A stretch of DNA of 64,000 bases. It comes from Octopus sinensis. Taxonomy: Eukaryota. Positions 16,305 to 64,000 of this stretch are shown piece by piece. Within the stretch, counting starts at the first letter, position 1; each line of letters begins with the position of its first letter. The notes beneath the pieces are model-generated. The model searched no databases. It saw nothing but the letters and a program-made list of their open reading frames with translations, and was not told the origin of the DNA. A program made the position numbers and the translations under genes. The DNA is taken from NCBI RefSeq assembly GCF_006345805.1, contig NC_043018.1, positions 6,448,001 to 6,512,000 on the forward strand, read 5' to 3'.

Positions 16305-16804
16305 GTGCGTGTATATTTGTGTGTCTGTGTTTGTCCCTCTAGCATTGCTTGATTACCGATGATGGTGTGTTTATGTCACGTAGTGGTTCGGCAAAAGAGA
16401 CCGATAGAATAAGTACTGGGCTTACAAAGAATAAGTCCTGGGGTCGAGTTGCTCGATTAAAGGCAATGCTCCAGCATGGCCGCAGTCAAATGACTGAAAC
16501 AAATGAAAGAGTAAAGAGTGTGTGTGTGTGTCTATGTTTGTTCCTCCAGCATCGCTTGACAACCAATAGTGGTGTGTTTACATCCCCGTAACTTAGCAGT
16601 TAGGCAAAAGAGACCGATAGAATAAGTACTGGGCTTACAAAGAATAAGTCCTGGGGTTGATTTGCTCGACTAAAGGCGGTGCTCCAGTATGGCCACAGTC
16701 AAATGACTGAAACAAGTAAAAGAGTATTAATTTTTCTAGAATGATATTGTAGGGTTAGTACGAAGGGCTATGTTTGGGCCTGATATGGCTTAAGTACTAA
16801 AGGG
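15985..16804. mobile_element. piggyBac-like MITE with TTAA on both sides, containing one full and one half SINE A (16093-16725)
   Basis: TTAA(15981-84)|CCCTCTAGCAC ... GTACTAAAGGG|TTAA(16805-08). Confidence 0.8.
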
Positions 16805-24224: not shown

Positions 24225-24861
24225 GTGTGTGGCTGTGTGGTAAGAATTTTGTTTCCCCACCACATAGTTCCGGGTTCAGTTCCACTACGTAGCACCTTAG
24301 GCATGCGTCTTCTACTATAGCTTCGGGCTGACCAAAGCCTTGTGGAGATTTGGTAGACGGAAACAGAAAGAAACCCGTCGCATGCGTGTGTGTGTGTGTG
24401 TGTGTGTGTGTTGTGTGTTTGTCCGCTCCCCCTTCATCGGCTGACAACCGGTTGAAGTGTTTACGTCCCCGTAAGTTAACGGTTCGACAAAAAAGAAAAA
24501 AAAAGGAGTGGCTGTGTGGTAAGTAGTTTGCTTACCAACCACATGGTTCCGGGTTCATTCCCACTGCGTGGCACCTTAGGCAAGTAAGTGTCTTCTACTA
24601 TAGCCTCGGGCCGACCAAAGCCTTGTGAGTGGATTTGGTAGATGGAAACTGAAAGAAGCCTGTCGTATATGTGTGCATGTTTGTCTCCTCAACATCGCTT
24701 GACAACCGATGCTGGTGTGTTTACGTCCCCGTAACTTAGCGGGTCGGCAAAAGAGACCGATAAAATAAATACCAGACTTACAAAGAATAAGTCCTGGGGG
24801 TCGATTTGCTCGATTAAAGGTGGTGCTCCGTCATGGCCGCAGTCAAATGCGAGCGTAAAGA

Positions 24862-24910
<49 letters not shown>

Positions 24911-25270
24911 GGCGCAGAAGTGGCTGTGTGGTAAGTAGCTTGCTTACCAACCACATGGTTCCAGGTTCAGTCCCACTGCGTGGCACCTTGGGCAAGTGTC
25001 TTCTACTATAGCCTCTGGCCGACCAAAGCCTTGTGAGTGGATTTGGTATATATATATGTGTGCGTGTATGTTTGTGTGTCTGTGTTTGTCCCCCTAGCAT
25101 TGCTTGACAACCGATGCTGGTGTGTTTATGTCCCCGTCACTTAGCGGTTCGGCAAAAGAGACCGATAGAATAAGTACTGGGCTTACAAAGAATAAGTCCC
25201 GGGGTCGAGTTGCTCGACTAAAGGCGGTGCTCCAGCATGGCCTCAGTCAACTGACTGAAACGAGTAAAAG
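24225..25270 (+). mobile_element. Three tandem SINE A copies (24225-24490, 24505-24865, 24910-25270)
   Basis: Repeated head/body matches; followed by an inverted copy at 25380-25665. Confidence 0.85.
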
Positions 25271-25271
25271 A

Positions 25272-25316
<45 letters not shown>

Positions 25317-27949: not shown

Positions 27950-29135
27950 CAAAAATTGAAGAAATTGAAAAGTGGCAACCTAACAGACAAGATCCGCTGT
28001 TGTTGTGGTTAAGAGGCTCCTTTCAGTGTTCCTCGACGAGATCGTCAATGTCCCTATCAACCTCAAGGCCCATGGACTTGCCAAGAGATAATATCTCCTC
28101 GACTACAGATGTCTCAGACTCAAACTCCTAGAGGTCTCTTTCGGATACGCAGCCAGGCCACAATTTCCTCCATGTAGAATTCTGCGTTCTCCTGTCAGGC
28201 TATGTCGATGATTTTCAGGCAGTTAACAATGTTGTGGTGCTCCTTCCAAAACTCACGAAAGGTTAAATTCGTATTTTCTGTGACTTCAAAGCACCGACGA
28301 AACAGGTGCTTGGTGTACAATTTCTTATCATCTGCTGGTCTATGGGGCTGCAAGATAGGAGTGGTGTTGCGTGAAAGGTGCAGAACTTTTATGAATTTAA
28401 ATTCGTCCAGAATATCATTTTCGAAATAATTAGAAGGGTGAGCAGGAGCATTGTCGAGGAGGGCCTTGAAAAGAAGGTCGTTCTCCAGAAAGTACTTTTT
28501 CACTGCTGGTCCGAAAACAAGGTCAACCCACTCGGTGAAGAAATGTCTGGTGACCCAGGCTTTAACGTTTGCCCTTCACATGACCTGCAGGCTTTCGGAA
28601 CAAGGAGCGGCTTAATCCTTCAAGTCTCTACTCGCATTGACACGAAGGGCGAGAGTTAACCTATATTTCACAGGCTTATGGCCTAGCATTTTCTTCTGCA
28701 GTTATGTAGCTTCTTTGGGGATTTTTTTTTTAATAAAAAGAGGCCAGTTTCATCACAGTCGAATACCTGTTGTGCGATGTACCCCTCGGCTGCGATGAGC
28801 TGACGGAATTCACGCACGAAATACTCAGCTGCCTTCGTGTCGGAACTCGCTGCTTCTCCATACCTGACGATGTTATGAACACCAGTCCTCTTCTTGAAAT
28901 TATCGAACCAGCCGCGACTGGCCTTAAATACGTCTGCTGATGTCTCTCCTCTGTCGATGTTCCAGGGTTCCGCTTCAGAAGATCCACATCCAGCGCTCGT
29001 GCTTTCTCGCGGATGATGGGTCTCTGTAATCGTGTCCCCCTGTGAGTTACTTCACGTTGATCCACAGGAGAAGCAATTTTTCCATCTCTTCGTGGACAGA
29101 TGTGCGTTACTTAGGGAACTTGGAGACAAACTTTG
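27950..29135 (-). pseudogene. Tigger/pogo-family transposase relic (multiple frameshifts)
   Basis: Fragments IIREKARAL, ASRGWFDNFKKR, QQVFDCDETGLF, KALL-DNAPAHP, NTTPILQP, KKLYTKHLF..FWK and LEVD..DDLVEEH match the Tigger1-like HTH (CENP-B) and DDE domains. Confidence 0.85.
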
Positions 29136-29267: not shown

Positions 29268-30557
29268 CGAGGGGCGTTCAATAAGTAATGCCCCTGACCC
29301 ACTTCCCATAGCAGTAGAGCAACGAAACTTGGCACAGTTATTAGTCTTTTTCTACATAGGAACCACCAAGAGTTACGCATTTCTCCCATCGTTTGATGCG
29401 GCTCTGGAGGCCGTTTTTGTAGAAGAACCCAGCTTGGTCCTCCAACCTCAACGTGACTTCAGAAATCAAGGCTGCATCATCTGGGAAACGCTTTCCTTTC
29501 AAAAACAACTTCATAATTGGGAAGAGGTGAAAATTAGAGGGTGCAAGGTCAGGAAAGTAGGGGAGATGGGGAGGAGTTCATAGCCATACGCCTGTGCTTC
29601 TGATCTGGCGACAAGCGAGTTGTGGACCGGAGCGTTGTCCTGCAGGAGGAGGATGTCTTTGCTGATCTTGCCCCGCCTCTTGATTTTGATAACTTCTCTT
29701 AATTTCCTCAAAAGTGAAGCATAATAGGCTCCTGGAATTGTGGTACCCTTTGCCAGGAAATCTGTCATCACTACTCCGTCCTGGTCCCAGAAGACTGTGA
29801 GCATGACCTTGCCAGCGGAGGGCTGCACCCTTGCCTTCTTTGGAGGGGGTGAGTCACGGTGCTTCCACTGCATTGACTGGGCTTTGGTCTCTGGATCATC
29901 GTGATGGACCCAGGTTTCATCCTGTGTAATCAGTCTTTTGAAAAATTTTGACTCATCTTCTTGGCACATCTCCAAATTCATCCTCGAGCACTCGACGCGT
30001 TCTTGCTTCTGGAAAGGCGTGAGCAACCTGGGAATCCATCTGGCAGACACCTTTTGCATATGCAAATGGTCATGAATGATAGTTTCCACAGACCCGGTAC
30101 TAATCTTGACCTCATGGGCTATTTGGCGAATAATTATGCGTCGATCTTCCAAAATGGCAGCCTCAACTTGACGGACAGATGCCTCATCAATGGCAGAAGG
30201 GGGCGACCAGATCTGGGAGCTGTTCCACAGAGTTCCGACCATGTTTGAATTCACGATGCCAGCGTTTTACAAGGTCATATGATGGGGCATCATCACCATA
30301 AGTTACTTTCATTTCATCAAAAGTCTCCCGTGGTGTGCGTCCTTTCAAATACAAAAACCGGATCACTGCTCGACACTCAACAGGCTCCATTTCACACTTG
30401 ACTCGGTTCAAACACCTGTAAATCAGAAACCACAATTAATTCAGAGCTGTAATTTGCCACTTAATCTATAAAGATATAAATGATTGCACATGCAAAATTT
30501 CAGCTAGATCAAACAATTGCAAGTGGGTCAGAGGCATTACTTATTGAACGTCCCTCG
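29268..30557 (-). mobile_element. Full-length mariner (1290 bp, irritans/Hsmar2-like TIR) inserted in (TA)n
   Basis: TA|CGAGGGGCGTTCAATAAGTAATGCCCCTGACCCACTT ... AAGTGGGTCAGAGGCATTACTTATTGAACGTCCCTCG|TA. Confidence 0.95.
29341..30390 (-). pseudogene. Mariner DD34D transposase, frameshifted
   Basis: ATG at 30390 (MEPVECRAVIRFL), WIPRLL, ITQDETW, LLQDNAPVH, then a frameshifted SPDLAPSDF region and TAA at 29341-43. Frameshifts near 30200-30230 and ~29570. Confidence 0.92.
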
Positions 30558-32544: not shown

Positions 32545-34025
32545 TCCCTTTTATTTGTGTTTCCGTCATTTGACTGCGGCCATGCTGGAGCATCATCACC
32601 TCAAGGGGTGGGGGGGGGTTAGTCGAAGAAATCGACCTCCAGGACTTATTCTTTGTAAGCTTAGTACTTATTCCATCGCCGTCTGTTTTCCGAACTACTA
32701 AGTTACGGGGACATAAAGACACTAACATCGGTTGTCAAACGACGGCGGGAGTACAAACACAGAAACACGCACACAAATGTAACGTGTGTGTGTGTGTATA
32801 TATATATATGTATATATATATGTATGTAATATATATGTATATAATATATATGTATATATATATTATATGTATGTATATATATATATGTATGTATATATAT
32901 ATGTATGTATATTATATATGTATGTATATATATATGTATGTATATATATATATGTATGTATATAATATATGTATGTATATATATATGTATGTATAAATAT
33001 ATGTATGTATAAATATATGTATGTATATATATATGTATGTATATATATATGTATATATATATATATATGTATATAATATATATGTATATATATATGTTAT
33101 ATATATATATGTATGTATATATATATGTATGTATATGTATATATATATATGTATGTATATATATATGTATGTATATATATATGTATATATATATATGTAT
33201 GTATATATATATATGTATGTATATATATATGTATGTATATATATATGTATGTATATGTATATATATGTGTATGTATATATATATATGTATATGTATGTAT
33301 ATATATATATGTATGTATATATATGTGTATGTATATATATATATATATGTATATGTATATACATGTATATATATGTATATGTATATACATGTATATATAT
33401 GTATATGTATATACATGTATATATATGTATATGTATGTACATGTATATATATGTATATGTATGTACATGTATATATATGTATATGTATATACATGTATAT
33501 ATATATATATGTATATACATGTATATATATGTATATATATATGTATATGTATATATATGTATATATATATGTATATGTATATACATGTATGTATATGTAT
33601 ATATATATGTATATGTATATACATGTATGTATATGTATATATATATGTATATGTATATACATGTATGTATATGTATATACATGTATATATATGTATATAT
33701 ATATGTATATACACACACACACAATTGCAGCGTGGAAGATGTTTGTAAGCCATTTAAGAACACTCAAAACCGTTAATTTCACTTTAACATTTAAATTTTA
33801 TTTGTGTCAAAATACTTTCATCGCTTTGAAACCGCGACCTGTTCATTGACAAAACTTCCTTATGCACGACGAGCTTCTTTCAGTTTCCGCTTACTAAATC
33901 CACTCGCAAAGCTTTGGTCGGCCCGAGGCTATAGAAGAGCACATTTGCCCAAGGTGCCCCGCAGTAGTGTAACTGCCCGGAACCCTGTGGGAAGCAAGCT
34001 TCTTACCACCACACCGCTACGCCTT
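32545..34025 (-). mobile_element. Single SINE A split by a ~940-bp expanded microsatellite (32780-33722) and a 135-bp repeat
   Basis: SINE 3' half at 32545-32780 and 5' half at 33865-34025 flank the array. Confidence 0.8.
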
Positions 34026-40334: not shown

Positions 40335-40836
40335 ATAATCAACTGGTACTTATTTTATCAACCCCGAAAGTGATGAAAAGCAAAGTCGACCTCGGCGGAT
40401 TTTGAATTCAGAACATAAAGGCAGACGAAATACCTATTTCTTTAAAACCCTCAAGGGGCTAAACACAGGGAGGACAAACAAGGACAGACAAACAGATTAA
40501 GTTGATTACATCGACCCCAGTGCGTAACTGGTACTTAATTTATTGACCCCAAAAGGATGAAAGGCAAAGCCGACCTCAGCAGATTTTGAATTCAGAACGT
40601 AAAGAGAGACGAAATACCTATTTCTTTACTACCCACAAGGGGTTGGGACAAACAAAGACAGACAAACGGATTAAGTCGCTTACATCAATCCCAGTGCGTA
40701 ACTGGTACTTAATTTATCGACCCTGAGAGGATGAAAGGCAAAGTTGACCTTGGCGAAATTTGAACTCAGAACGTAACGGCAGACGAAACACGGCTACGCA
40801 TTTCGCCCGGCGTGCTAACGTTTCTGCCAGCTCGCC
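40335..40836 (-). mobile_element. SINE family B multimer: one head followed by ~184-bp units in tandem
   Basis: Junction AAAGAAATAGGTATTTCGTC (on -) at about 40428 and 40612. Confidence 0.85.
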
Positions 40837-50697: not shown

Positions 50698-51235
50698 AGG
50701 TGCAGGAGTGGCTGTGTGGTAAGTAGCTTGCTTACCAACCACATGGTCCAGGTTCAGTCCCACAGTGTGGCACTTTGGGCAAGTGTCTTCTACTATAGCC
50801 TCAGGCCGACCAAAGCTTTGTGAGTGCATTTGGTAGACGGAAACTGAAAGAAGCCCATCGTATGTATATATATATAGCTTGCTTACCAACCACATGGTTC
50901 CGGGTTCAGTCCCACTGTGTGGCACCTTGGGCAAGTGTCTTCTACTATAGCCTTGGGCTGACCAAAGCCTTGAGAGGATTTGGTAGACGGAAACTGAAAG
51001 AAGCCCATTGTATATATGTATATATATATATGTGTGTGTTTGTCCCCCCAACATCGCTTGACAACAGATGCTGGTGTGTTTACGTCCCCGTAACTTAGCG
51101 GTTCGGCAAAAGAGACCGATAGAATAAGTACTAGGCTTACAAAGAATAAGTCCTGGGGTTGATTTGCTCGACTAAAGGCGGTGCTCCAGCATGGCCGCAG
51201 TCAAATGTCTGAAACAAGTAAAAGAGAGAGAGAGA
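50698..51235 (+). mobile_element. SINE A head duplicated in tandem followed by a full body
   Basis: 50698-50875 and 50875-51235. Confidence 0.85.
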
Positions 51236-54269: not shown

Positions 54270-54724
54270 ATATATTTGATGCCTCAGTCTCCATGTCTCT
54301 ATTTCTGTGTCTCTTTGGCTATCTCTCCCACCCTCTCTCTACCTTCTATCTCTTTCTTCTCTCTACTGTTTCTCTCTCTCTCTCATCCTCTTATCTCTTC
54401 TTTGTCTCTCCTTCATATCTTCCTCTCCTCTGTCTTCAATGCTGTCTGTCTGTCTCTCTCTCTCTCCTCGTCCTTTCCTCTTTCTCTGTCCGTCTATCCG
54501 CTGTCCCTTTCTCGATGCTTCCTCTCCCTTCCCCACCCAGTTCCATTGACCAATTGACCAAACTTTCTATTATCTCTGACAGAGTGGCTAGCCCAGAATG
54601 GATATCTGGACAAGATATGGTATTTGAAAGTCCACATCCTCAGTTAAACACTCGCTCTAGGAAAACACTCAGGTGAGATATGCACAGGCGACGAGGAGGT
54701 GATGTTGTCATATCTCTCTCTCTT

Positions 54725-54782
<58 letters not shown>

Positions 54783-55114
54783 ACTCTGCTTTTCTCTCTC
54801 TTTCACTCTGTTTCTCTCTCTCTTTCACTCTGTTTCTCTCTCTCTCTCTATCACTGTTTCTCTCTCTCTGCCACTCTTTCTCTCTCTCTCTCTATCACTG
54901 TTTTTCTCTCTCTCTCTTTCTCTGTCACTCTGTTTTTTCTCTCTCTCTCTCTCTCTGTCACTCTGCTTTTCTCTCTCTCTTTTCCTGTCACTCTGTTTCT
55001 CTCTCTCTCTCTCTTTCTCTCTATCACTGTTTCTCTCTCTGTCACTCCATTTTTCTCTCTTTTTTCTATTTATTCCATTTCCTTTTACTCTGTCTGTTTG
55101 CCTGCCTGCCTGTT

Positions 55115-56860: not shown

Positions 56861-56933
56861 TGCCGAAACCTGGGATCGAACCAGGGACCTTTAGATCTCC
56901 AGTCTAACGCTCTCCCGACTGAGCTATTTAGGC
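56861..56933 (-). tRNA. tRNA-Phe-derived gene/pseudogene with anticodon GGA (Ser) instead of GAA
   Basis: 73 nt GCCTAAATAGCTCAGTCGGGAGAGCGTTAGACTGGAGATCTAAAGGTCCCTGGTTCGATCCCAGGTTTCGGCA differs from metazoan tRNA-Phe(GAA) as I recall it at about 4 sites. A and B boxes intact, T4:C69 acceptor mismatch, TTTCTTTT 16 nt downstream. Confidence 0.9.
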
Positions 56934-57836: not shown

Positions 57837-57885
<49 letters not shown>

Positions 57886-57892
<7 letters not shown>

Positions 57893-58740
57893 ATCACTTG
57901 ACCGACCAGACCATCAGATGTTGTTACACATCGCTGGTCACAATGCGTTCGCATGGTTTTAGCCTTCGAATGACGCCACCCCGCTGGTTAAGCGAGCAGG
58001 CCAACAGAAGAAAGAGTGTGAGAAAGTGTGGTGAAAGAGTACAGCTGGGATCACCACCCCCTACCGGAGACTCGTGGAGCTTTTTAGGTGTTTTCGCTCA
58101 ATAAACACTCACAACACCCGGTCTGGGAATCGAAACCGCGATCCTACGACCGCGAGTCCGCTGCCCTAACCACTGGGCCATTGCGTCTCCACACACATAT
58201 ATATATATTCAATCCAGGGCAAGTTGTCTTGCCTGGTCTATGGTTTTCAGCTGTTTTAATGCCCAGCGTTATTAGGGAGTCTCCTTAAATGCTGTCCTGC
58301 AGTGAATTTGCCGAATAAAGAAACCACATACATTACGTATATGCGATTGATAATGTTTTTGCTTCCCAACCACATGGTTACAGGTTCAGTCCCACTGTGT
58401 GGCACCTTGGGCAAGTGTCTTCTACTATAGCCGCGGGCCGACCAAGGCTTTGTGAGTGGATTTGGTACACGGGAACTGAAATAAGCCTGTCGTATATATG
58501 TATATATCTATGTGTGTGTGTGTCTTTGTGGCTGCATTCTCCCTCCCCTCCATACTGGTTGACAACTGGTGTTGGTGTGTTTATGTCCCCATAGCTTAGC
58601 AGTTCAGCAAAAGAAACCAAGAGAATAAGTACTAGGCTTAAGAATTAGTCCTAGGGTCAATTGTTTGACTAAAACCCTTCAAGCCACTGCTCCAGCATGG
58701 CCACAGTGAAATGACTGAACACAAGTAAAAGAATAGATAT

Positions 58741-58775
<35 letters not shown>

Positions 58776-59625
58776 CACGTGATCACTTGACCGACCAGAC
58801 CATCAGATGTTGTTACACATCGCTGGTCACAATGCGTTCGCATGGTTTTAGCCTTCGAATGACGCCACCCCGCTGGTTAAGCGAGCAGGCCAACAGAAGA
58901 AGAGTGTGAGAAAGTGTGGTGAAAGAGTACAGCTGGGATCACCACCCCCTACCGGAGACTCGTGGAGCTTTTTAGGTGTTTTCGCTCAATAAACACTCAC
59001 AACACCCGGTCTGGGAATCGAAACCGCGATCCTACGACCGCGAGTCCGCTGCCCTAACCACTGGGCCATTGCGTCTCCACACACATATATATATATTCAA
59101 TCCAGGGCAAGTTGTCTTGCCTGGTCTATGGTTTTCAGGTGTTTTAATGCCCAGCGTTATTAGGGAGTCTCCTTAAATGCTGTCCTGCAGTGAATTTGCC
59201 GAATAAAGAAACCACATACATTACGTATATGCGATTGATAATGTTTTTGCTTCCCAACCACATGGTTACAGGTTCAGTCCCACTGTGTGGCACCTTGGGC
59301 AAGTGTCTTCTACTATAGCCGCGGGCCGACCAAGGCTTTGTGAGTGGATTTGGTACACGGGAACTGAAATAAGCCTGTCGTATATATGTATATATCTATG
59401 TGTGTGTGTGTCTTTGTGGCTGCATTCTCCCTCCCCTCCATACTGGTTGACAACTGGTGTTGGTGTGTTTATGTCCCCATAGCTTAGCAGTTCAGCAAAA
59501 GAAACCAAGAGAATAAGTACTAGGCTTAAGAATTAGTCCTAGGGTCAATTTGTTTGACTAAAACCCTTCAAGCCACTGCTCCAGCATGGCCACAGTGAAA
59601 TGACTGAACACAAGTAAAAGAATAG

Positions 59626-59656: not shown

Positions 59657-60929
59657 GGTGTGTGTGTGTGTATTTGTTCCCAACAACTACTTAACAACTG
59701 GTGATGGTTTGTTTACGTCCCCCATAAAAGAGAATGATAGAGTAAATTCCAGGCTTTACAAAAATTAAGTTGTGGGATTGATTTGCTTGACTAAAATTCT
59801 TCCAGGTAGTGCCCCAGCATGGCCGCAGTCTCGTGACTGAAACAAGTAAAAGGTAAAATGTAAACACGAGTCTGTATTCTGCAGATGAGGACTTAATAGG
59901 CTGGAACTTGTCCACAGGTGTCCTTGGCCAGCACACAAATATGATGATGATGATGATAATGATGTTGAATACATAGGTGGTTGTCTGTGTTGTTATTGTT
60001 TGTTTTTAATGTTAATTCCAATCTTTTCCCTTTTTTTTTTTTTTTTACATCCATTTTTCTTATTTTTCTAACTTCTGTAGAGATTTGACTACTAACAAAA
60101 TATTGTTAATCTATTAATTTATTTGGAACGGTGAGCTGGCAGAATCAGCATGAGACAAATGTTTAGTGGTTTTTTTTGTTTTTTTTTTGTCTGATTCATT
60201 ACATTTGGAGTTCCAATTCCACCAATGTTGACTTTTGAATACAGAAGTGATCAAAAAACCTCCAGCTCCTGGATATCAGCAACACACATTGGTCAGTTAT
60301 GACCCAGAGTCAGTTCAATTGGCGCTTTACCAGTCACTGGGCCCCCCCCACTGGAAAAATGTTTAGCCTTCTACTTTTTTTGCTTCTACTTTAAGTTTTG
60401 ATCAGTAATATTCTTTTCCCTGATTTCACTTCATGAAACAGTGGCCATGCTGTGGCAACATCTTGTAAAGTGTAGTCAATTTCATCATCAAGCGTGTAAT
60501 TTGAACTCCTGAATCCAAAATATAAAGAGGTGTAAGCCAATTGTCACACAGTATATGTATCTGATGCTCTACTGATGTACCTATTTCTTTACTACCCACA
60601 AGGGGCTAAACACAGATAGGACAAACAAACGGATTAAGTCGATTATATTGACCCAGTGCGTAACTGGTACTTATTTAATCGACCCCGAAAGGATGAAAGG
60701 CAAAGTCGACCTCGGTGGAATTTGAACTCAGAGCGTAGCGGCAGACAAAATACTGCTAAGCATTTCGCCTGGCGTGCTAACGTTTCTGCCAGCTCGTCCC
60801 CTCTATCTATCAATTGATTCTATCATTCACCTGCTAATTTTTTTATTTCTTTGTTGAGTTGTTTGTTTATTTCCAATACCTGTGTTACATAAAAATTAAC
60901 AATGATATTTTTTCTTTTTCTTCTTGCAG

Positions 60930-63900
60930 TATTGCTGCTGTGACCCGTTCTTCAACGAAAACTTCTCTCATCAAAGACAATTCCATTCCAGTCGCTGATT
61001 TTTACTCTGAACCGATATTTTCGCCGCCGGGTGTCAAGACCCGACTACGTCGTCAATCAATGTATGTGCAAAAGCAAGTCCCAAATGTCTCGTTTTCAGT
61101 CACAAAACAGGATGTGACATTTTCTGAAACGAGCTCGTTGACTTCTGCCACGGTGACCAGCGTCTCGAGTCGCACCGTAACAACTGTCGAGCAGACAAAG
61201 TCATCTTCGGAGATGTCTGCTTTGGTCGGCAATGACCAGGCAGTTGATGGACTGGCAGGCGAGAAAGAGACAATCAGTGAAGAAATCAGCAACATCATCA
61301 ATAACCTTCGCGACTCGAATCGCAAGCGCAAGTCTGATGTGCAGACAGTGGAGACTTCTGACGTAAAAGAAAAAGTGCTGAAACCCTCAAAGACACTGGA
61401 AGAAGAGAAATTGTCTCTGGTTAGGAGTTTGTCGTTGAAGGAGAGGTCCAAAGATGTTTCGACAGCGGAAAACGAAAACGTATCCGAATCAGTTACTGTG
61501 GATATTGTTTCCGAAGAAGCGGAAGACGCTGAAGTGGAAGACGCTGGAGTAGAAGACGTAGAAGAGGTCCCGCCTGAAGTACAAGATGATTCCAGTAAAG
61601 CTAAGAAAAGCGCACCACAGAAGAAGAAGCCGGGAAGAAAAAGCAAGTCTCCCGCTGCTAAGACAAAGACGACCAGGACACGGAAGACAAGTACTTCGAG
61701 GACCAAAAGCCAAGAAACTGATTCAGAAGAAGTAGCAACGGTTGAAGTGGTTGTAGAAAGCAGCAAAACTACACCTTCAAAGAAGAAAAGGGGCACGACA
61801 CCAGTGAAAGCAAAAGCAAGCAGTAAAAAAGGGGCAAAGAAAAGTACCACTCCTAAAAGACAAGCAAGTGCACCGAACAAGGAATTGGTCGTGGAAGCCG
61901 TTACTCCAGTAAAGAAAGAAAGGAGATCACGGTCGTTGGGGCCGAAGAGTAAAAAGAAAGTAGAAGAGGTGGCGGCAGACAAACCAGATGAGGATGCCGC
62001 TTCGGTTGAAACGAAAGAAACATCTAAAAAAGGCTCTCGTTCGCGTAAAGGTACTCCTCAAAAATCTTCTGTAAAAGGCCCACGTAAAAAATCCACTTCG
62101 AGGAAATCAACTCCAGTGAGAAAGGCAACCCCTACGAAAACGCGTACTCCGAGAAAGGGTACTCCATCTAGAGAAAGAAAGGCTACTCCCACAAGAAAGG
62201 CCACCCCCACAAGGAAGGCCACCCCCACAAGAAAGGCCACACCCACAAGAAAGGCCACACCCACAAGGAAGGCCACACCCACAAGAAAGGCAAAGAAAGC
62301 CACTCCGTCTAGGGAAGCAACTCCTGCCAGAAAATCCAGTACTCCTGTCAGAGAGGCTACTCCTGCTAGAAAATCTGCCACCCCACTTCGAGAAAGTTCT
62401 CCTGCTACAAAATCTGCCTCTCCAGCTCGAGAAAGTACTCCTGCAAGAAAGGCCACTCCTTCTAGAGAAGCAACTCCTGCTAGAAAGGGTACTCCTGCTA
62501 GAAAGACTACTGCTACTAGAAAGGGTACTCCTGCTAGAAAGGGTACTCCTACTAGAAAGGCCACACCTTCTCGAGAAACAAGCGTTTCGAGAAAATCGTC
62601 TCCAAAGAAGGTGACCCCTTCTAGGGAGGTTACACCTGCGAGAAAGAGTACTACTAGGAAAGCAACACCTTCTAGGAGAGGATCTCCATCCAAAGCAGTC
62701 AAAGAGAAGACATCACGACGGAAATCTAGTGGAAAGAAGTCACAGAAAACATCACGGTCTCGAAGCAAAACAAAGAGAGTCCACAAGCGTTCTTCTTCAA
62801 AGAAAGCCGACAAGAAGAAAACAGTGCTGGCCACGCAGGAAAAAGAAGAATCCTTGTCTACTGTTGATGGGGCTGAGGAAAAAACAGCACCGCCCCCACA
62901 AAAGACTGCCACCAGTAGCTCTTCTATGTCTACAATAATCACCGGTCTCTTTAAGCATTTCGTCCCAAGCCAGAAAAAGGCAAAAGTAGTTGAGTCCACC
63001 ACAAGCACGGATACCACCACCACAACAACAACAACAGTTGGTGGTTCCATGGCAGCTGAGTCTGAAGTTGATACAGGGGAAGAACTGAGAAGGAAGATAC
63101 CAGAGGCAAGAAAACACGCACTGATTTCTTCACCTCTGGATTCCAGCACACCTGATGTTCCCCAGGTTCCTAAAGCATCTTTCGTTAGTAGACTGAGAGA
63201 GACAGCTTCAAGCCTGTCCCCATTTGCCCTGAGCAGGTCGTTCGAGTATAAGCGTGCTGTTGTAGCATCAGCTAACAACAAGACTGTAGAGATTTCGGAG
63301 ACGATCACACATCCAGGAACGACTGCTGGCAAAGGATTTGATGAGGCTGACCAACCAATGTCAGCAGTTGAAATGACCGCCAATGAAGATACGGAGAGCT
63401 CCACTCCTGCAACAGTTGAAGAGGATGAAAGCGAGCAAAAGCAAGATGAAAAAGTTGTCGACACACGAGAAGTGCATTACGAGTCCCAGGAATCAGAAAT
63501 GGATGACGGGTCGATCATTGATAAGCTGGTTCATTATGAGTCCCAGCAGTCTGAGATAGAGGAGGTAGAAGCTGATAATCAGAAAAGTGTTCACTATGAG
63601 TCCCAGCATGACACTGAGGAAGAGTCCCAGGTTGAGACAGAAGATGACTCCCAGGCTGAGGTGGAGAATGAGGTGGAAGAAGAGTCACATGATGTGGTGG
63701 AGAAAAAGACACATGTTGAAGAAGAAGAAGTGTCACTTGATGTGGTAGGGAAAAAGATCCATGTTGAAGAAGAAGTGTCACTTGATGTGGTAAAGAAAAA
63801 GACCCATGTTGAAGAAGAAGAGGAGGAAGAAGAAGAAGAAGAGGAGGAGGAAGAGTCACATGATGTGGTGGAGAAAAAGACCTATGTTGAGGAACAAGAG

Positions 63901-64000
63901 TCCCAAGCTGAGACAGAAGAAGAGTCCCAGGTCGAGACAGAAGAAGAGTCGCAGGTTGAAACAGAAGAGTCACATGATGTGGTGGAGAAAAAGACCTATA
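60930..64000 (+). CDS. Giant internal coding exon (>1023 codons, runs off the window): unknown disordered protein with basic S/T-P-x-K/R repeats and acidic repeats
   Basis: Polypyrimidine tract + TTGCAG acceptor at 60929. Frame from 60931 has no stop to 64000 (IAAVTRSSTKTSLIKDNSIPVADFYSEPIFSPPGVKTRLRRQSMYVQKQ...). Repeat-free, higher GC, synonymous variation among repeats. Confidence 0.93.

What the first reader, a model, noticed from the sequence alone, without database searches (positions are those of the whole stretch)
62041..62700. Array of 29 CDK-consensus S/T-P-x-K/R motifs in 220 residues, including (KATPTR)x6
By my count there are 29 full motifs here plus four upstream, arranged mostly as 6-residue (18-bp) repeats; 62179-62286 is six exact KATPTR with synonymous variation. 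SPKK/TPxR motifs are established minor-groove DNA-binding and CDK1-regulated units in histone H1 tails and sea-urchin sperm histones. This density suggests a phospho-switched chromatin- or RNA-condensing module in a very large non-histone protein I do not recognise.
Basis: partly seen in the sequence, partly recalled or inferred. Interest (0 to 1): 0.75.

Follow-up and report, generated by a model that had tools for sequence, protein, structure and literature searches.

The report
Dense Thr-Pro-x-Arg repeat in orphan giant exon
The repeat is real: about 30 six-residue Lys/Glu-x-Thr-Pro-x-Arg units sit in a very long, disordered coding exon of an unidentified animal gene. It looks like a phosphorylation-controlled charge switch, but neither the gene nor what the array binds could be established.

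Summary
Window 62041-62700 translates to 220 residues with 29 [S/T]-P-x-[K/R] motifs, against 3.0 +/- 1.6 in composition-matched shuffles. Four more lie upstream, and 62179-62286 is KATPTR x6 differing only at third codon positions.

The array lies in one long exon. A splice acceptor sits at 60929/60930, and the frame stays open to the window end (at least 1023 codons). The exon runs from a mildly acidic N part, through a 410-residue basic block (net +103) holding the array, to a neutral stretch and acidic repeats (net -70).

No gene identity was obtained. There is no Pfam hit. A search of 1.84 billion proteins matched only the low-complexity array, in unrelated contexts. The 60 kb upstream holds only SINEs, transposon remnants and microsatellites.

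The mechanism is inferred, not shown. The array would be a multi-site target of proline-directed kinases. Its charge falls from +59 to about -1 if all 30 S/T-P sites are phosphorylated. That would release it from a polyanion: nucleic acid, microtubules, or its own acidic tail.

Only 3 of 33 motifs are true SPKK-type. CDK5 and ERK share the consensus, so the chromatin reading is possible but unproven. It is a new member of a known kind, of moderate interest.

The parts
60930..63999 (+). One long coding exon, open at the window's 3' end. First full codon at 60931; at least 1023 codons.
   Evidence: Frame open 60838-63999 (1054 codons). Polypyrimidine tract plus CAG acceptor directly before 60930. 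Third-codon-position excess of differences among repeat units.
60910..60929 (+). Polypyrimidine tract and AG: putative 3' splice site (ttttctttttcttcttgcag).
   Evidence: Read directly. Inferred, with no transcript evidence.
61267..61335 (+). The only predicted secondary-structure element of note: a helix, ETISEEISNIINNLRDSNRKRKS.
   Evidence: AlphaFold2 single-sequence model, H113-135, pLDDT about 56-65, while the rest is below 50.
61600..62830 (+). Basic block of 410 residues: 130 K+R, 27 D+E (net +103), 35 S/T-P.
61771..61914 (+). Four dispersed upstream S/T-P-x-K/R motifs (TPSK, TPVK, TPKR, TPVK).
61777..61794 (+). SKKKRG, a monopartite NLS-like basic cluster. A bipartite-like KKERRSRSLGPKSKKK lies at 61912-61959.
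   Evidence: Pattern match only, and expected by chance in this composition.
62041..62700 (+). The array: 220 residues, 29 [ST]-P-x-[KR] motifs, 30 S/T-P, net charge +59, mostly [K/E]-small-T-P-small-R hexapeptides.
62179..62286 (+). KATPTR x6, the youngest 18-bp expansion. Differences are only synonymous.
62431..62574 (+). Eight consecutive in-register 18-bp units (ESTPAR KATPSR EATPAR KGTPAR KTTATR KGTPAR KGTPTR KATPSR), with alternating K-/E-initial units and one decayed unit.
62701..62830 (+). K/R/S-rich tail of the basic block (RRKSSGKKSQKTSRSRSKTKRVHKRSSSKK), without prolines.
63331..63999 (+). Acidic repeat block: 87 D+E against 17 K+R in 224 residues. It contains HYESQ x3, DVV-x-KK-x-x-V plus poly-E units, and EEESQVET units. 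It runs off the window.

Best explanation
The interval is part of a single giant coding exon of an unidentified, apparently lineage-restricted animal gene. The genome context is SINE-rich and intron-rich, and looks cephalopod-like from memory of the SINE only. The 220 codons encode an intrinsically disordered polycation built from about 30 hexapeptides, [K/E]-small-T-P-small-R. It is coded by an 18-bp coding minisatellite that is still expanding (KATPTR x6) and whose older copies have been kept at the peptide level.

Most likely mode of action: a multi-site charge switch driven by a proline-directed kinase. Unphosphorylated, the segment (net +59, inside a +103 block) binds a polyanion. Nucleic acid or chromatin is slightly favoured as that polyanion. 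Microtubules, or the protein's own acidic C-terminal repeats, are the alternatives. Each unit carries about two positive charges and one phosphorylatable Thr. Phosphorylating all 30 S/T-P sites (-2 each) would bring the segment to about -1, which would abolish the binding and erase the positive charge block. The strong Thr-over-Ser bias (26:4) and the basic residues on both sides of each site match the recognition signal described for PP2A-B55, so the switch would be rapidly reversible.

Shown here: the exon, the array, its non-random nature, the conservation pattern and the charge arithmetic. Inferred: the kinase, the phosphatase, the ligand, the localisation and expression.
For: Long open frame with a splice acceptor. 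29 motifs against 3.0 +/- 1.6 in shuffles. Differences among units fall at codon positions 1/2/3 as 503/368/1148, and 0/0/24 within KATPTR x6. Without any motif pre-filter they are 130/40/256. pN/pS is 0.28 overall and 0.00 at the Pro codon, though those units were pre-selected by motif. Net charge goes from +59 to -1 with 30 phosphates. TP:SP is 26:4, and 21 sites have K/R at -2 as well as +3. The segment is on the disordered side of the charge-hydropathy plot, and AlphaFold2 gives pLDDT below 50 throughout the array. Literature: phosphorylation of S in SPKK motifs inhibits DNA binding (PMC9903204). PP2A-B55 substrates share a bipartite polybasic signal around a Cdk site, with phosphothreonine enrichment, and T-to-S changes slow dephosphorylation (PMC5004449). 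CDK1 phosphorylation changes charge blocks and the phase behaviour of Ki-67 and NPM1 disordered regions (PMC9106583).
Against: There is no evidence of expression, phosphorylation or localisation. The gene could not be named. No orthologue was found, so conservation across species is unknown. The pN/pS calculation used units pre-selected by the motif, which biases it towards conservation; the unfiltered blocks are small. Similar arrays occur elsewhere as mere linkers in unrelated proteins. No convincing cyclin-docking (RxL), PP1 (RVxF), KEN or D-box motif was found. AlphaFold2 without an alignment cannot prove disorder.
Confidence: 0.4

Rival explanations
1. Cytoskeletal reading. The exon encodes a projection or side-arm domain of a neuronal or other cytoskeletal protein, of the neurofilament-tail or MAP1B/Futsch/tau/giant-ankyrin type. 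The TP-x-R array would be phosphorylated by CDK5 or ERK in axons, tuning microtubule binding or filament spacing rather than chromatin.
For: S/T-P-x-K/R is also the CDK5 consensus, and neurofilament KSPXK/KSP repeats are CDK5 and ERK targets. PP2A dephosphorylates NF-H, and squid axon neurofilaments are classic phosphoproteins (PMC11502590). The architecture, a giant single exon with a basic S/T/P-rich block next to long E-rich repeats, resembles neurofilament tails and MAP projection domains (own knowledge). The motif spacing of about one site per 6-7 residues is like NF-H KSP arrays (own knowledge).
Against: Only one KSP occurs in the exon. No intermediate-filament rod, tau/MAP tubulin-binding repeat, MAP1B repeat, ZU5 or ankyrin domain was found in the exon or in 283 upstream open segments on both strands, although the rest of the gene lies outside the window. 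NLS-like clusters are present.
Confidence: 0.22
2. The array is an SPKK/H1-tail-like, minor-groove DNA-binding (or RNA-binding) condensing module, switched off by CDK1 in mitosis or after fertilisation. The protein would be a chromatin, nucleolar or chromosome-periphery protein, functionally Ki-67- or nucleolin-like.
For: Polycation of net +59 within a +103 block. NLS-like KKKR and a bipartite-like cluster. An adjacent K/R/S-rich stretch and a large acidic block, as in nucleolar proteins (own knowledge). SPKK phosphorylation inhibits DNA binding (PMC9903204). Ki-67 and NPM1 disordered regions are regulated by CDK1 through charge (PMC9106583). TP sites with polybasic flanks fit mitotic-exit PP2A-B55 substrates (PMC5004449).
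Against: Only 3 of 33 motifs are S/T-P-[KR]-[KR]. No linker-histone, FHA, Ki-67-repeat, RRM, SAP or AT-hook domain was detected in the window. There are no localisation or expression data. The consensus is shared with non-nuclear kinases.
Confidence: 0.22
3. Unregulated low-complexity spacer, or an extracellular domain. The array would be an entropic linker or bristle, or a secreted T/S/P-rich mucin-like or adhesive repeat that is O-glycosylated on Thr. In this reading its match to a kinase consensus is incidental to amplification of one 18-bp unit.
For: The best array matches in 1.84e9 proteins are linkers in unrelated proteins, including bacterial surface proteins and a chemokine-domain protein. 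Composition is T 20%, S 12%, P 14%. Amplification of a single unit explains the motif count without invoking function.
Against: About 30% K+R is atypical of mucin domains (own knowledge). T, P and the basic position are kept while synonymous sites are diverged. The alternation of K- and E-initial units and the near-exact charge compensation look non-accidental. No signal peptide could be looked for, because the N-terminus is outside the window.
Confidence: 0.1
4. Not a functional exon. The frame would be a fortuitous or decaying open frame, such as a pseudogene, an unexpressed expansion, or a precursor cut at RK dibasic sites into tiny peptides.
For: No transcript evidence. No homologue anywhere. 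RK pairs recur every six residues.
Against: 1054 stop-free codons in 42-47% GC sequence. Variation is strongly three-periodic. A clean acceptor site is present. The minus-strand ORFs are explained as shadows of a purine-rich coding strand. Peptide precursors are small secreted proteins and are normally cut at KR/RR, not RK (own knowledge).
Confidence: 0.05

Closest known systems
S/T-P-K-K (SPKK) repeats of sea-urchin and hydrozoan sperm H1/H2B tails, and S/T-P-x-K sites of somatic H1 C-terminal tails
   Same: Short tandem basic units centred on a phosphorylatable S/T-Pro within a disordered polycation. In those proteins phosphorylation of the S inhibits DNA binding (PMC9903204).
   Different: Here the unit is a hexapeptide, T-P-(A/S/T)-R-(K/E)-x, with a small residue rather than a basic one after Pro. 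Only 3 of 33 motifs are true SPKK. There are about 30 copies instead of up to 7. Thr replaces Ser. The array sits inside a protein of more than 1000 residues, and no histone fold or linker-histone domain was detected.
Neurofilament NF-H/NF-M tail KSP / KSPXK repeats (vertebrates; squid NF-220)
   Same: Dozens of tandem proline-directed kinase sites at roughly 6-8-residue spacing in a disordered, charge-rich region next to E-rich segments. The repeats are CDK5 and ERK substrates dephosphorylated by PP2A (PMC11502590).
   Different: The motif is K-S-P there, and x-T-P-x-R here, with only 1 KSP. No intermediate-filament rod domain is seen in the window. Unphosphorylated NF-H repeats are far less cationic (own knowledge).
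Ki-67 repeat domain and NPM1 disordered region (CDK1-tuned charge blocks)
   Same: A very large disordered protein encoded largely by one giant exon, with many CDK-consensus sites. Mitotic phosphorylation changes charge blocks and phase behaviour (PMC9106583). PP2A-B55 counteracts it (PMC11290319, title and abstract only).
   Different: Ki-67 has 16 repeats of about 110 residues, an FHA domain, a PP1-binding motif and an LR domain. None was detected here. In this exon phosphorylation would erase a positive block, which is NPM1-like, rather than create alternating blocks.
Nucleolin N-terminal TPxKK repeats alternating with acidic stretches (own knowledge)
   Same: Thr-Pro basic repeats that are CDK1 sites, combined with long acidic runs in one disordered region of a nucleic-acid-binding protein.
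   Different: Nucleolin has about 9 repeats, RRM and GAR domains and modest size. No RRM was detected in the window.
PP2A-B55 bipartite polybasic recognition determinant (PRC1, TPX2 and others)
   Same: A phospho-Thr-Pro site flanked on both sides by basic residues. More basic residues give faster dephosphorylation, and Thr is strongly preferred over Ser (PMC5004449).
   Different: Known substrates carry one or a few such sites. Here about 21 sites with K/R at both -2 and +3 are concatenated. Nothing was tested biochemically.

Membership tests
SPKK-type DNA-binding units (sperm H1/H2B, H1 tails) | Tetrapeptide S/T-P-(K/R)-(K/R) | tested here: not met
   3 of 33 motifs (TPKR 61849, TPRK 62146, SPKK 62599). 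The other 30 have A/S/T/V/L/Q at the third position.
SPKK-type DNA-binding units (sperm H1/H2B, H1 tails) | Carried on a histone (histone fold or linker-histone globular domain) | tested here: inconclusive
   No Pfam domain in the 1014-residue exon or in 149 upstream + strand open segments. The rest of the gene lies outside the window.
SPKK-type DNA-binding units (sperm H1/H2B, H1 tails) | Binds the A/T-rich minor groove; binding abolished by phosphorylation | not testable with these tools
   Needs DNA-binding assays.
CDK (proline-directed kinase) multi-site substrate | Full consensus S/T-P-x-K/R | tested here: met
   33 in the exon and 29 in 220 residues, against 3.0 +/- 1.6 in shuffles. The pattern is shared by CDK1/2 and CDK5.
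CDK (proline-directed kinase) multi-site substrate | Cyclin docking motif (RxL/Cy) or other docking site | tested here: inconclusive
   Four loose [RK]xL matches, none in a convincing context. Eight S-[ST]-P cores could become Polo-box sites.
CDK (proline-directed kinase) multi-site substrate | Sites actually phosphorylated in vivo | not testable with these tools
   No proteomic data. A literal peptide search of 8.4 million papers found nothing.
Ki-67 | FHA domain, PP1-binding RVxF, ~110-residue Ki-67 repeats | tested here: not met
   No Pfam hit in the exon, no RVxF match and no such domain in upstream open segments. An N-terminal FHA domain outside the window cannot be excluded.
Neurofilament heavy/medium tail | K-S-P repeats downstream of an intermediate-filament rod | tested here: not met
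   One KSP only. No Filament domain in the window.
Tau/MAP2/MAP4 or MAP1B/Futsch | Tubulin-binding repeats or MAP1B repeats | tested here: inconclusive
   None in the part of the gene inside the window. In those proteins such repeats would lie 3' of a proline-rich region, which here is beyond the window end.
PP2A-B55 substrate (bipartite polybasic recognition) | pThr-Pro with basic residues on both sides | tested here: met
   TP:SP is 26:4, and 21 sites match [KR]-x-[ST]-P-x-[KR]. This is sequence pattern only, with the criterion taken from PMC5004449.
Mucin-type PTS domain | S/T/P-rich tandem repeats in a secreted protein, few charged residues | tested here: not met
   S+T+P is 46%, but K+R is 30%. 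A signal peptide could not be assessed.

The most novel reading that the evidence does not exclude
A cephalopod-lineage orphan giant disordered protein works as a chromosome or nucleolar coat (functionally Ki-67-like) or as a germline condenser. Its binding would be governed by an all-or-none charge-cancellation array: about 30 T-P-x-R units, each with two positive charges and one phosphate acceptor, written by CDK1 and erased quickly by PP2A-B55. This would be an independently evolved solution to mitotic or spermiogenic chromatin surface control, with repeat number as a tunable threshold.
Probability: 0.1. Interest if true: 0.65.

Novelty: new member of a known kind. Interest (0 to 1): 0.35.

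Why it matters
If the charge-switch reading is right, this is an unusually clean natural example of multi-site phospho-regulation by stoichiometric charge cancellation. The segment goes from +59 to about -1 using about 30 near-identical Thr-Pro sites with built-in phosphatase recognition. That would make it a good model substrate for studying thresholds and ultrasensitivity in CDK/PP2A-B55 or CDK5 systems. It would also be a marker for a lineage-restricted giant disordered protein. If it is merely a linker, it is an ordinary coding minisatellite.

Tried and rejected
1. Naming the gene by homology failed. Pfam on the exon gave nothing at E<=1. The word-indexed search of 5.8e9 proteins with the N-terminal flank gave nothing.
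2. phmmer against 1.84e9 representatives gave 34 hits, all confined to query residues about 300-610, that is the array and the adjacent basic region. The best was E=3.8e-17 and none touched the non-repetitive flanks.
3. A search of the array with source names returned only a bacterial DUF4384 protein, a frog ZC3H7B and an unnamed ENA protein.
4. Two metagenome scans with the non-repetitive parts gave nothing.
5. Looking for upstream exons failed. 149 + strand and 134 - strand stop-free segments from the non-repetitive parts of 1-60800 were scanned against Pfam. The + strand gave only chance-level hits (best E 0.0017 in 149 tests). The - strand gave only mariner (Transposase_1, HTH_48) and pogo/Tc5 (DDE_1, HTH_Tnp_Tc5) remnants.
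6. Inferring function from proteins with similar arrays was rejected. Their domains are heterogeneous: eCIS core, PP2C, AAA, SpaA, IL8, SWIB, zinc ribbons and others.
7. Identifying the organism through the mariner copy failed. The best relatives are unnamed Logan and ENA contigs.
8. Literature searches found nothing: literal peptide strings, 'octopus' with 'giant exon', and cephalopod with SPKK.
9. The minus-strand ORFs overlapping the exon (62058-63464 and 61053-61982) were rejected as shadow frames of a purine-rich coding strand.
10. The dibasic-cleavage peptide-precursor idea was rejected on architecture.
11. AlphaFold2 found no folded domain to send to Foldseek.
Full report
**1. The observation**

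The + strand is open from 60838 to the last base of the window, 1054 codons. Directly before 60930 there is a 20-nt polypyrimidine tract ending in CAG. I therefore read 60930-63999 as one internal exon that runs off the window, with at least 1023 codons.

Translating 62041-62700 in this frame gives 220 residues with 29 [ST]-P-x-[KR] motifs. Four more lie upstream at 61771, 61798, 61849 and 61903, exactly as reported. Shuffling the same 220 residues 5000 times gives 3.0 +/- 1.6 motifs, with a maximum of 10.

- 30 of the 31 prolines follow S or T.
- 17 of the 29 site-to-site spacings are exactly 6 residues.
- Tandem Repeats Finder reports 18-bp arrays at 62175-62291 and 62436-62561, with 36/39/54-bp higher-order periods.
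- 62179-62286 is KATPTR x6, and all nucleotide differences among the six units fall at codon position 3.
- The 18-mer occurs nowhere else in the window, apart from one 3-mismatch chance match.

**2. Is it coding and under selection?**

Among 26 motif-bearing units, pairwise differences fall 503/368/1148 at codon positions 1/2/3. Two unfiltered, in-register blocks (6 + 8 consecutive units) give 130/40/256. A Nei-Gojobori-type count gives pN/pS of 0.28 overall, 0.00 at the Pro codon and 0.13 at the Thr codon. The two variable positions are much higher, at 0.51 and 0.71.

That calculation used units picked by the motif, so it is biased towards conservation. The unfiltered blocks point the same way but are small.

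The two long minus-strand ORFs over the exon are shadows of a purine-rich coding strand, which has an AT skew of +0.335.

**3. Anatomy of the exon**

| Region | Content |
|---|---|
| 60931-61599 | S/T/V/E-rich and mildly acidic. Contains the only predicted helix (61267-61335, pLDDT about 60). |
| 61600-62830 | Basic block of 410 residues, net +103. Holds NLS-like SKKKRG (61777-61794), a bipartite-like basic pair (61912-61959), the array, and a proline-free K/R/S tail. |
| 62831-63330 | Neutral and S/T-rich. |
| 63331 to window end | Acidic repeats (HYESQ x3, DVV-x-KK-x-x-V plus poly-E, EEESQVET), net about -70. |

The array composition is T 43, R 34, K 33, P 31, A 28, S 27, E 8, and almost nothing else. 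It lies on the disordered side of the charge-hydropathy plot. AlphaFold2 run without an alignment gives pLDDT below 50 throughout. That agrees with disorder but does not prove it.

**4. What gene is it?**

I could not name it.

- Pfam finds nothing in the exon.
- phmmer against 1.84 billion cluster representatives returns 34 hits. All are confined to the array and the adjacent basic region, and none reaches the non-repetitive flanks.
- Those hit proteins are unrelated to each other. They include a weak SAP match below the Pfam cut-off, a SWIB protein, bacterial surface and linker proteins and a chemokine-domain protein.
- The word-indexed searches and two metagenome scans also found nothing relevant.
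- The 60 kb upstream is 43% self-repetitive. It holds SINE copies, microsatellites, a mariner remnant and a pogo-like remnant.
- 283 stop-free segments from its non-repetitive parts gave no Pfam domain other than transposases.

So the upstream region is a large intron or intergenic DNA, and the informative domains, if any, lie outside the window. Whether the protein libraries contain proteomes of the source lineage at all could not be established. The lack of an orthologue is therefore weak evidence for lineage restriction.

**5. Mechanism (inferred)**

Each K-initial unit carries two positive charges and one Thr-Pro. E-initial units are neutral. The 220 residues have 67 K+R and 8 E, a net charge of +59. 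Thirty phosphates at -2 bring this to -1. That near-exact compensation, the strict retention of T, P and R, and the K/E alternation suggest a graded or threshold charge switch.

Three precedents support the idea:

- SPKK phosphorylation inhibits DNA binding in sperm histones (PMC9903204).
- CDK1 phosphorylation reshapes charge blocks and phase separation in Ki-67 and NPM1 (PMC9106583).
- PP2A-B55 recognises a Cdk site flanked by basic residues on both sides, and prefers phosphothreonine so strongly that T-to-S changes slow dephosphorylation (PMC5004449).

Here TP:SP is 26:4, and 21 sites have K/R at both -2 and +3. The polyanionic partner is unknown. It could be nucleic acid or chromatin, microtubules, or the protein's own acidic repeats.

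**6.

The SPKK unit proper, S/T-P-[KR]-[KR], accounts for only 3 of 33 motifs. The same S/T-P-x-K/R consensus is used by CDK5, and KSP repeats of neurofilament tails are also ERK targets (PMC11502590). A neuronal cytoskeletal protein with basic and E-rich blocks is therefore a serious rival.

The NLS-like clusters tilt slightly towards the nucleus, but they are expected by chance in this composition. No histone, FHA, Ki-67-repeat, RRM, IF-rod or tubulin-binding domain was detected in the window. This fails or leaves open every specific family membership while leaving 'works like' intact.

**7. Verdict**

This is a real, selected, still-expanding coding minisatellite. It encodes a disordered polycation with about 30 proline-directed kinase consensus sites, inside an orphan giant exon. 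The kind is known: H1 and sperm-histone tails, nucleolin TPxKK, NF-H KSP and Ki-67. This member is new and unusually regular and dense, and its biological role is undetermined. Interest is moderate. The decisive data are the full transcript, expression, localisation and phosphorylation, all of which lie outside what these tools can reach.

Noticed in passing
window 56861-56933 (-): tRNA-like gene scoring 65.5 bits to Rfam tRNA. ARAGORN calls it Ser(GGA), but it is 73 nt with no long variable arm, and its body looks Lys/Arg-like. It is probably a tRNA-derived pseudogene or SINE head rather than a working tRNA-Ser.
   Followed up: partly
window 57863-59199: Perfect (100%) tandem duplication with an 888/889-bp period just upstream of the exon. 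Examples are 58012-58311 = 58900-59199 and 57863-58012 = 58752-58901. It contains SINE-like pieces and is either a very recent duplication or an assembly artefact.
   Followed up: partly
window 29511-30435 (-): Mariner-type transposase remnant (HTH_48 + Transposase_1), split into two ORFs. The closest database relatives are 89-92% identical and come from unnamed Logan/ENA contigs.
   Followed up: yes
window 28195-29110 (-): pogo/Tc5-like transposase remnant (DDE_1 and HTH_Tnp_Tc5 hits among minus-strand segments), next to the mariner copy. Assigning the two hits to these particular ORFs was done by eye.
   Followed up: partly
window 24507-25312, 50724-51026, 16318-16726, 40472-40788 and many others: Abundant copies, some in tandem, of a tRNA-related SINE family (GTGGCTGTGTGGTAAGTAGCTTGCTTACCAACCACATGG...). 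43% of the window matches itself elsewhere. I recall this SINE from octopus genomes, but that was not verified.
   Followed up: no
window 32795-33711; 54713-55040; 1490-1741; 2537-2678: Long microsatellites: about 0.9 kb of (TATA/TGTATATATA)n, then (TC)n, (TATG/TATA)n and (AT)n.
   Followed up: no
window 63331-63999 (+): In the same exon downstream of the array there are several distinct acidic repeat families: HYESQ x3, 45/48-bp units encoding EEVSLDVV-x-KK-x-HVEE, a (GAA)n poly-Glu run and 24-bp EEESQVET units. Together they form a net -70 block opposite the +103 basic block.
   Followed up: partly
window 61042-61059 (+): RLRRQS, a basophilic-kinase (PKA/AMPK-type) site that is also 14-3-3-like, lies near the start of the exon, just before the first in-frame Met (61060). 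The Met has a poor Kozak context, which fits an internal exon.
   Followed up: no
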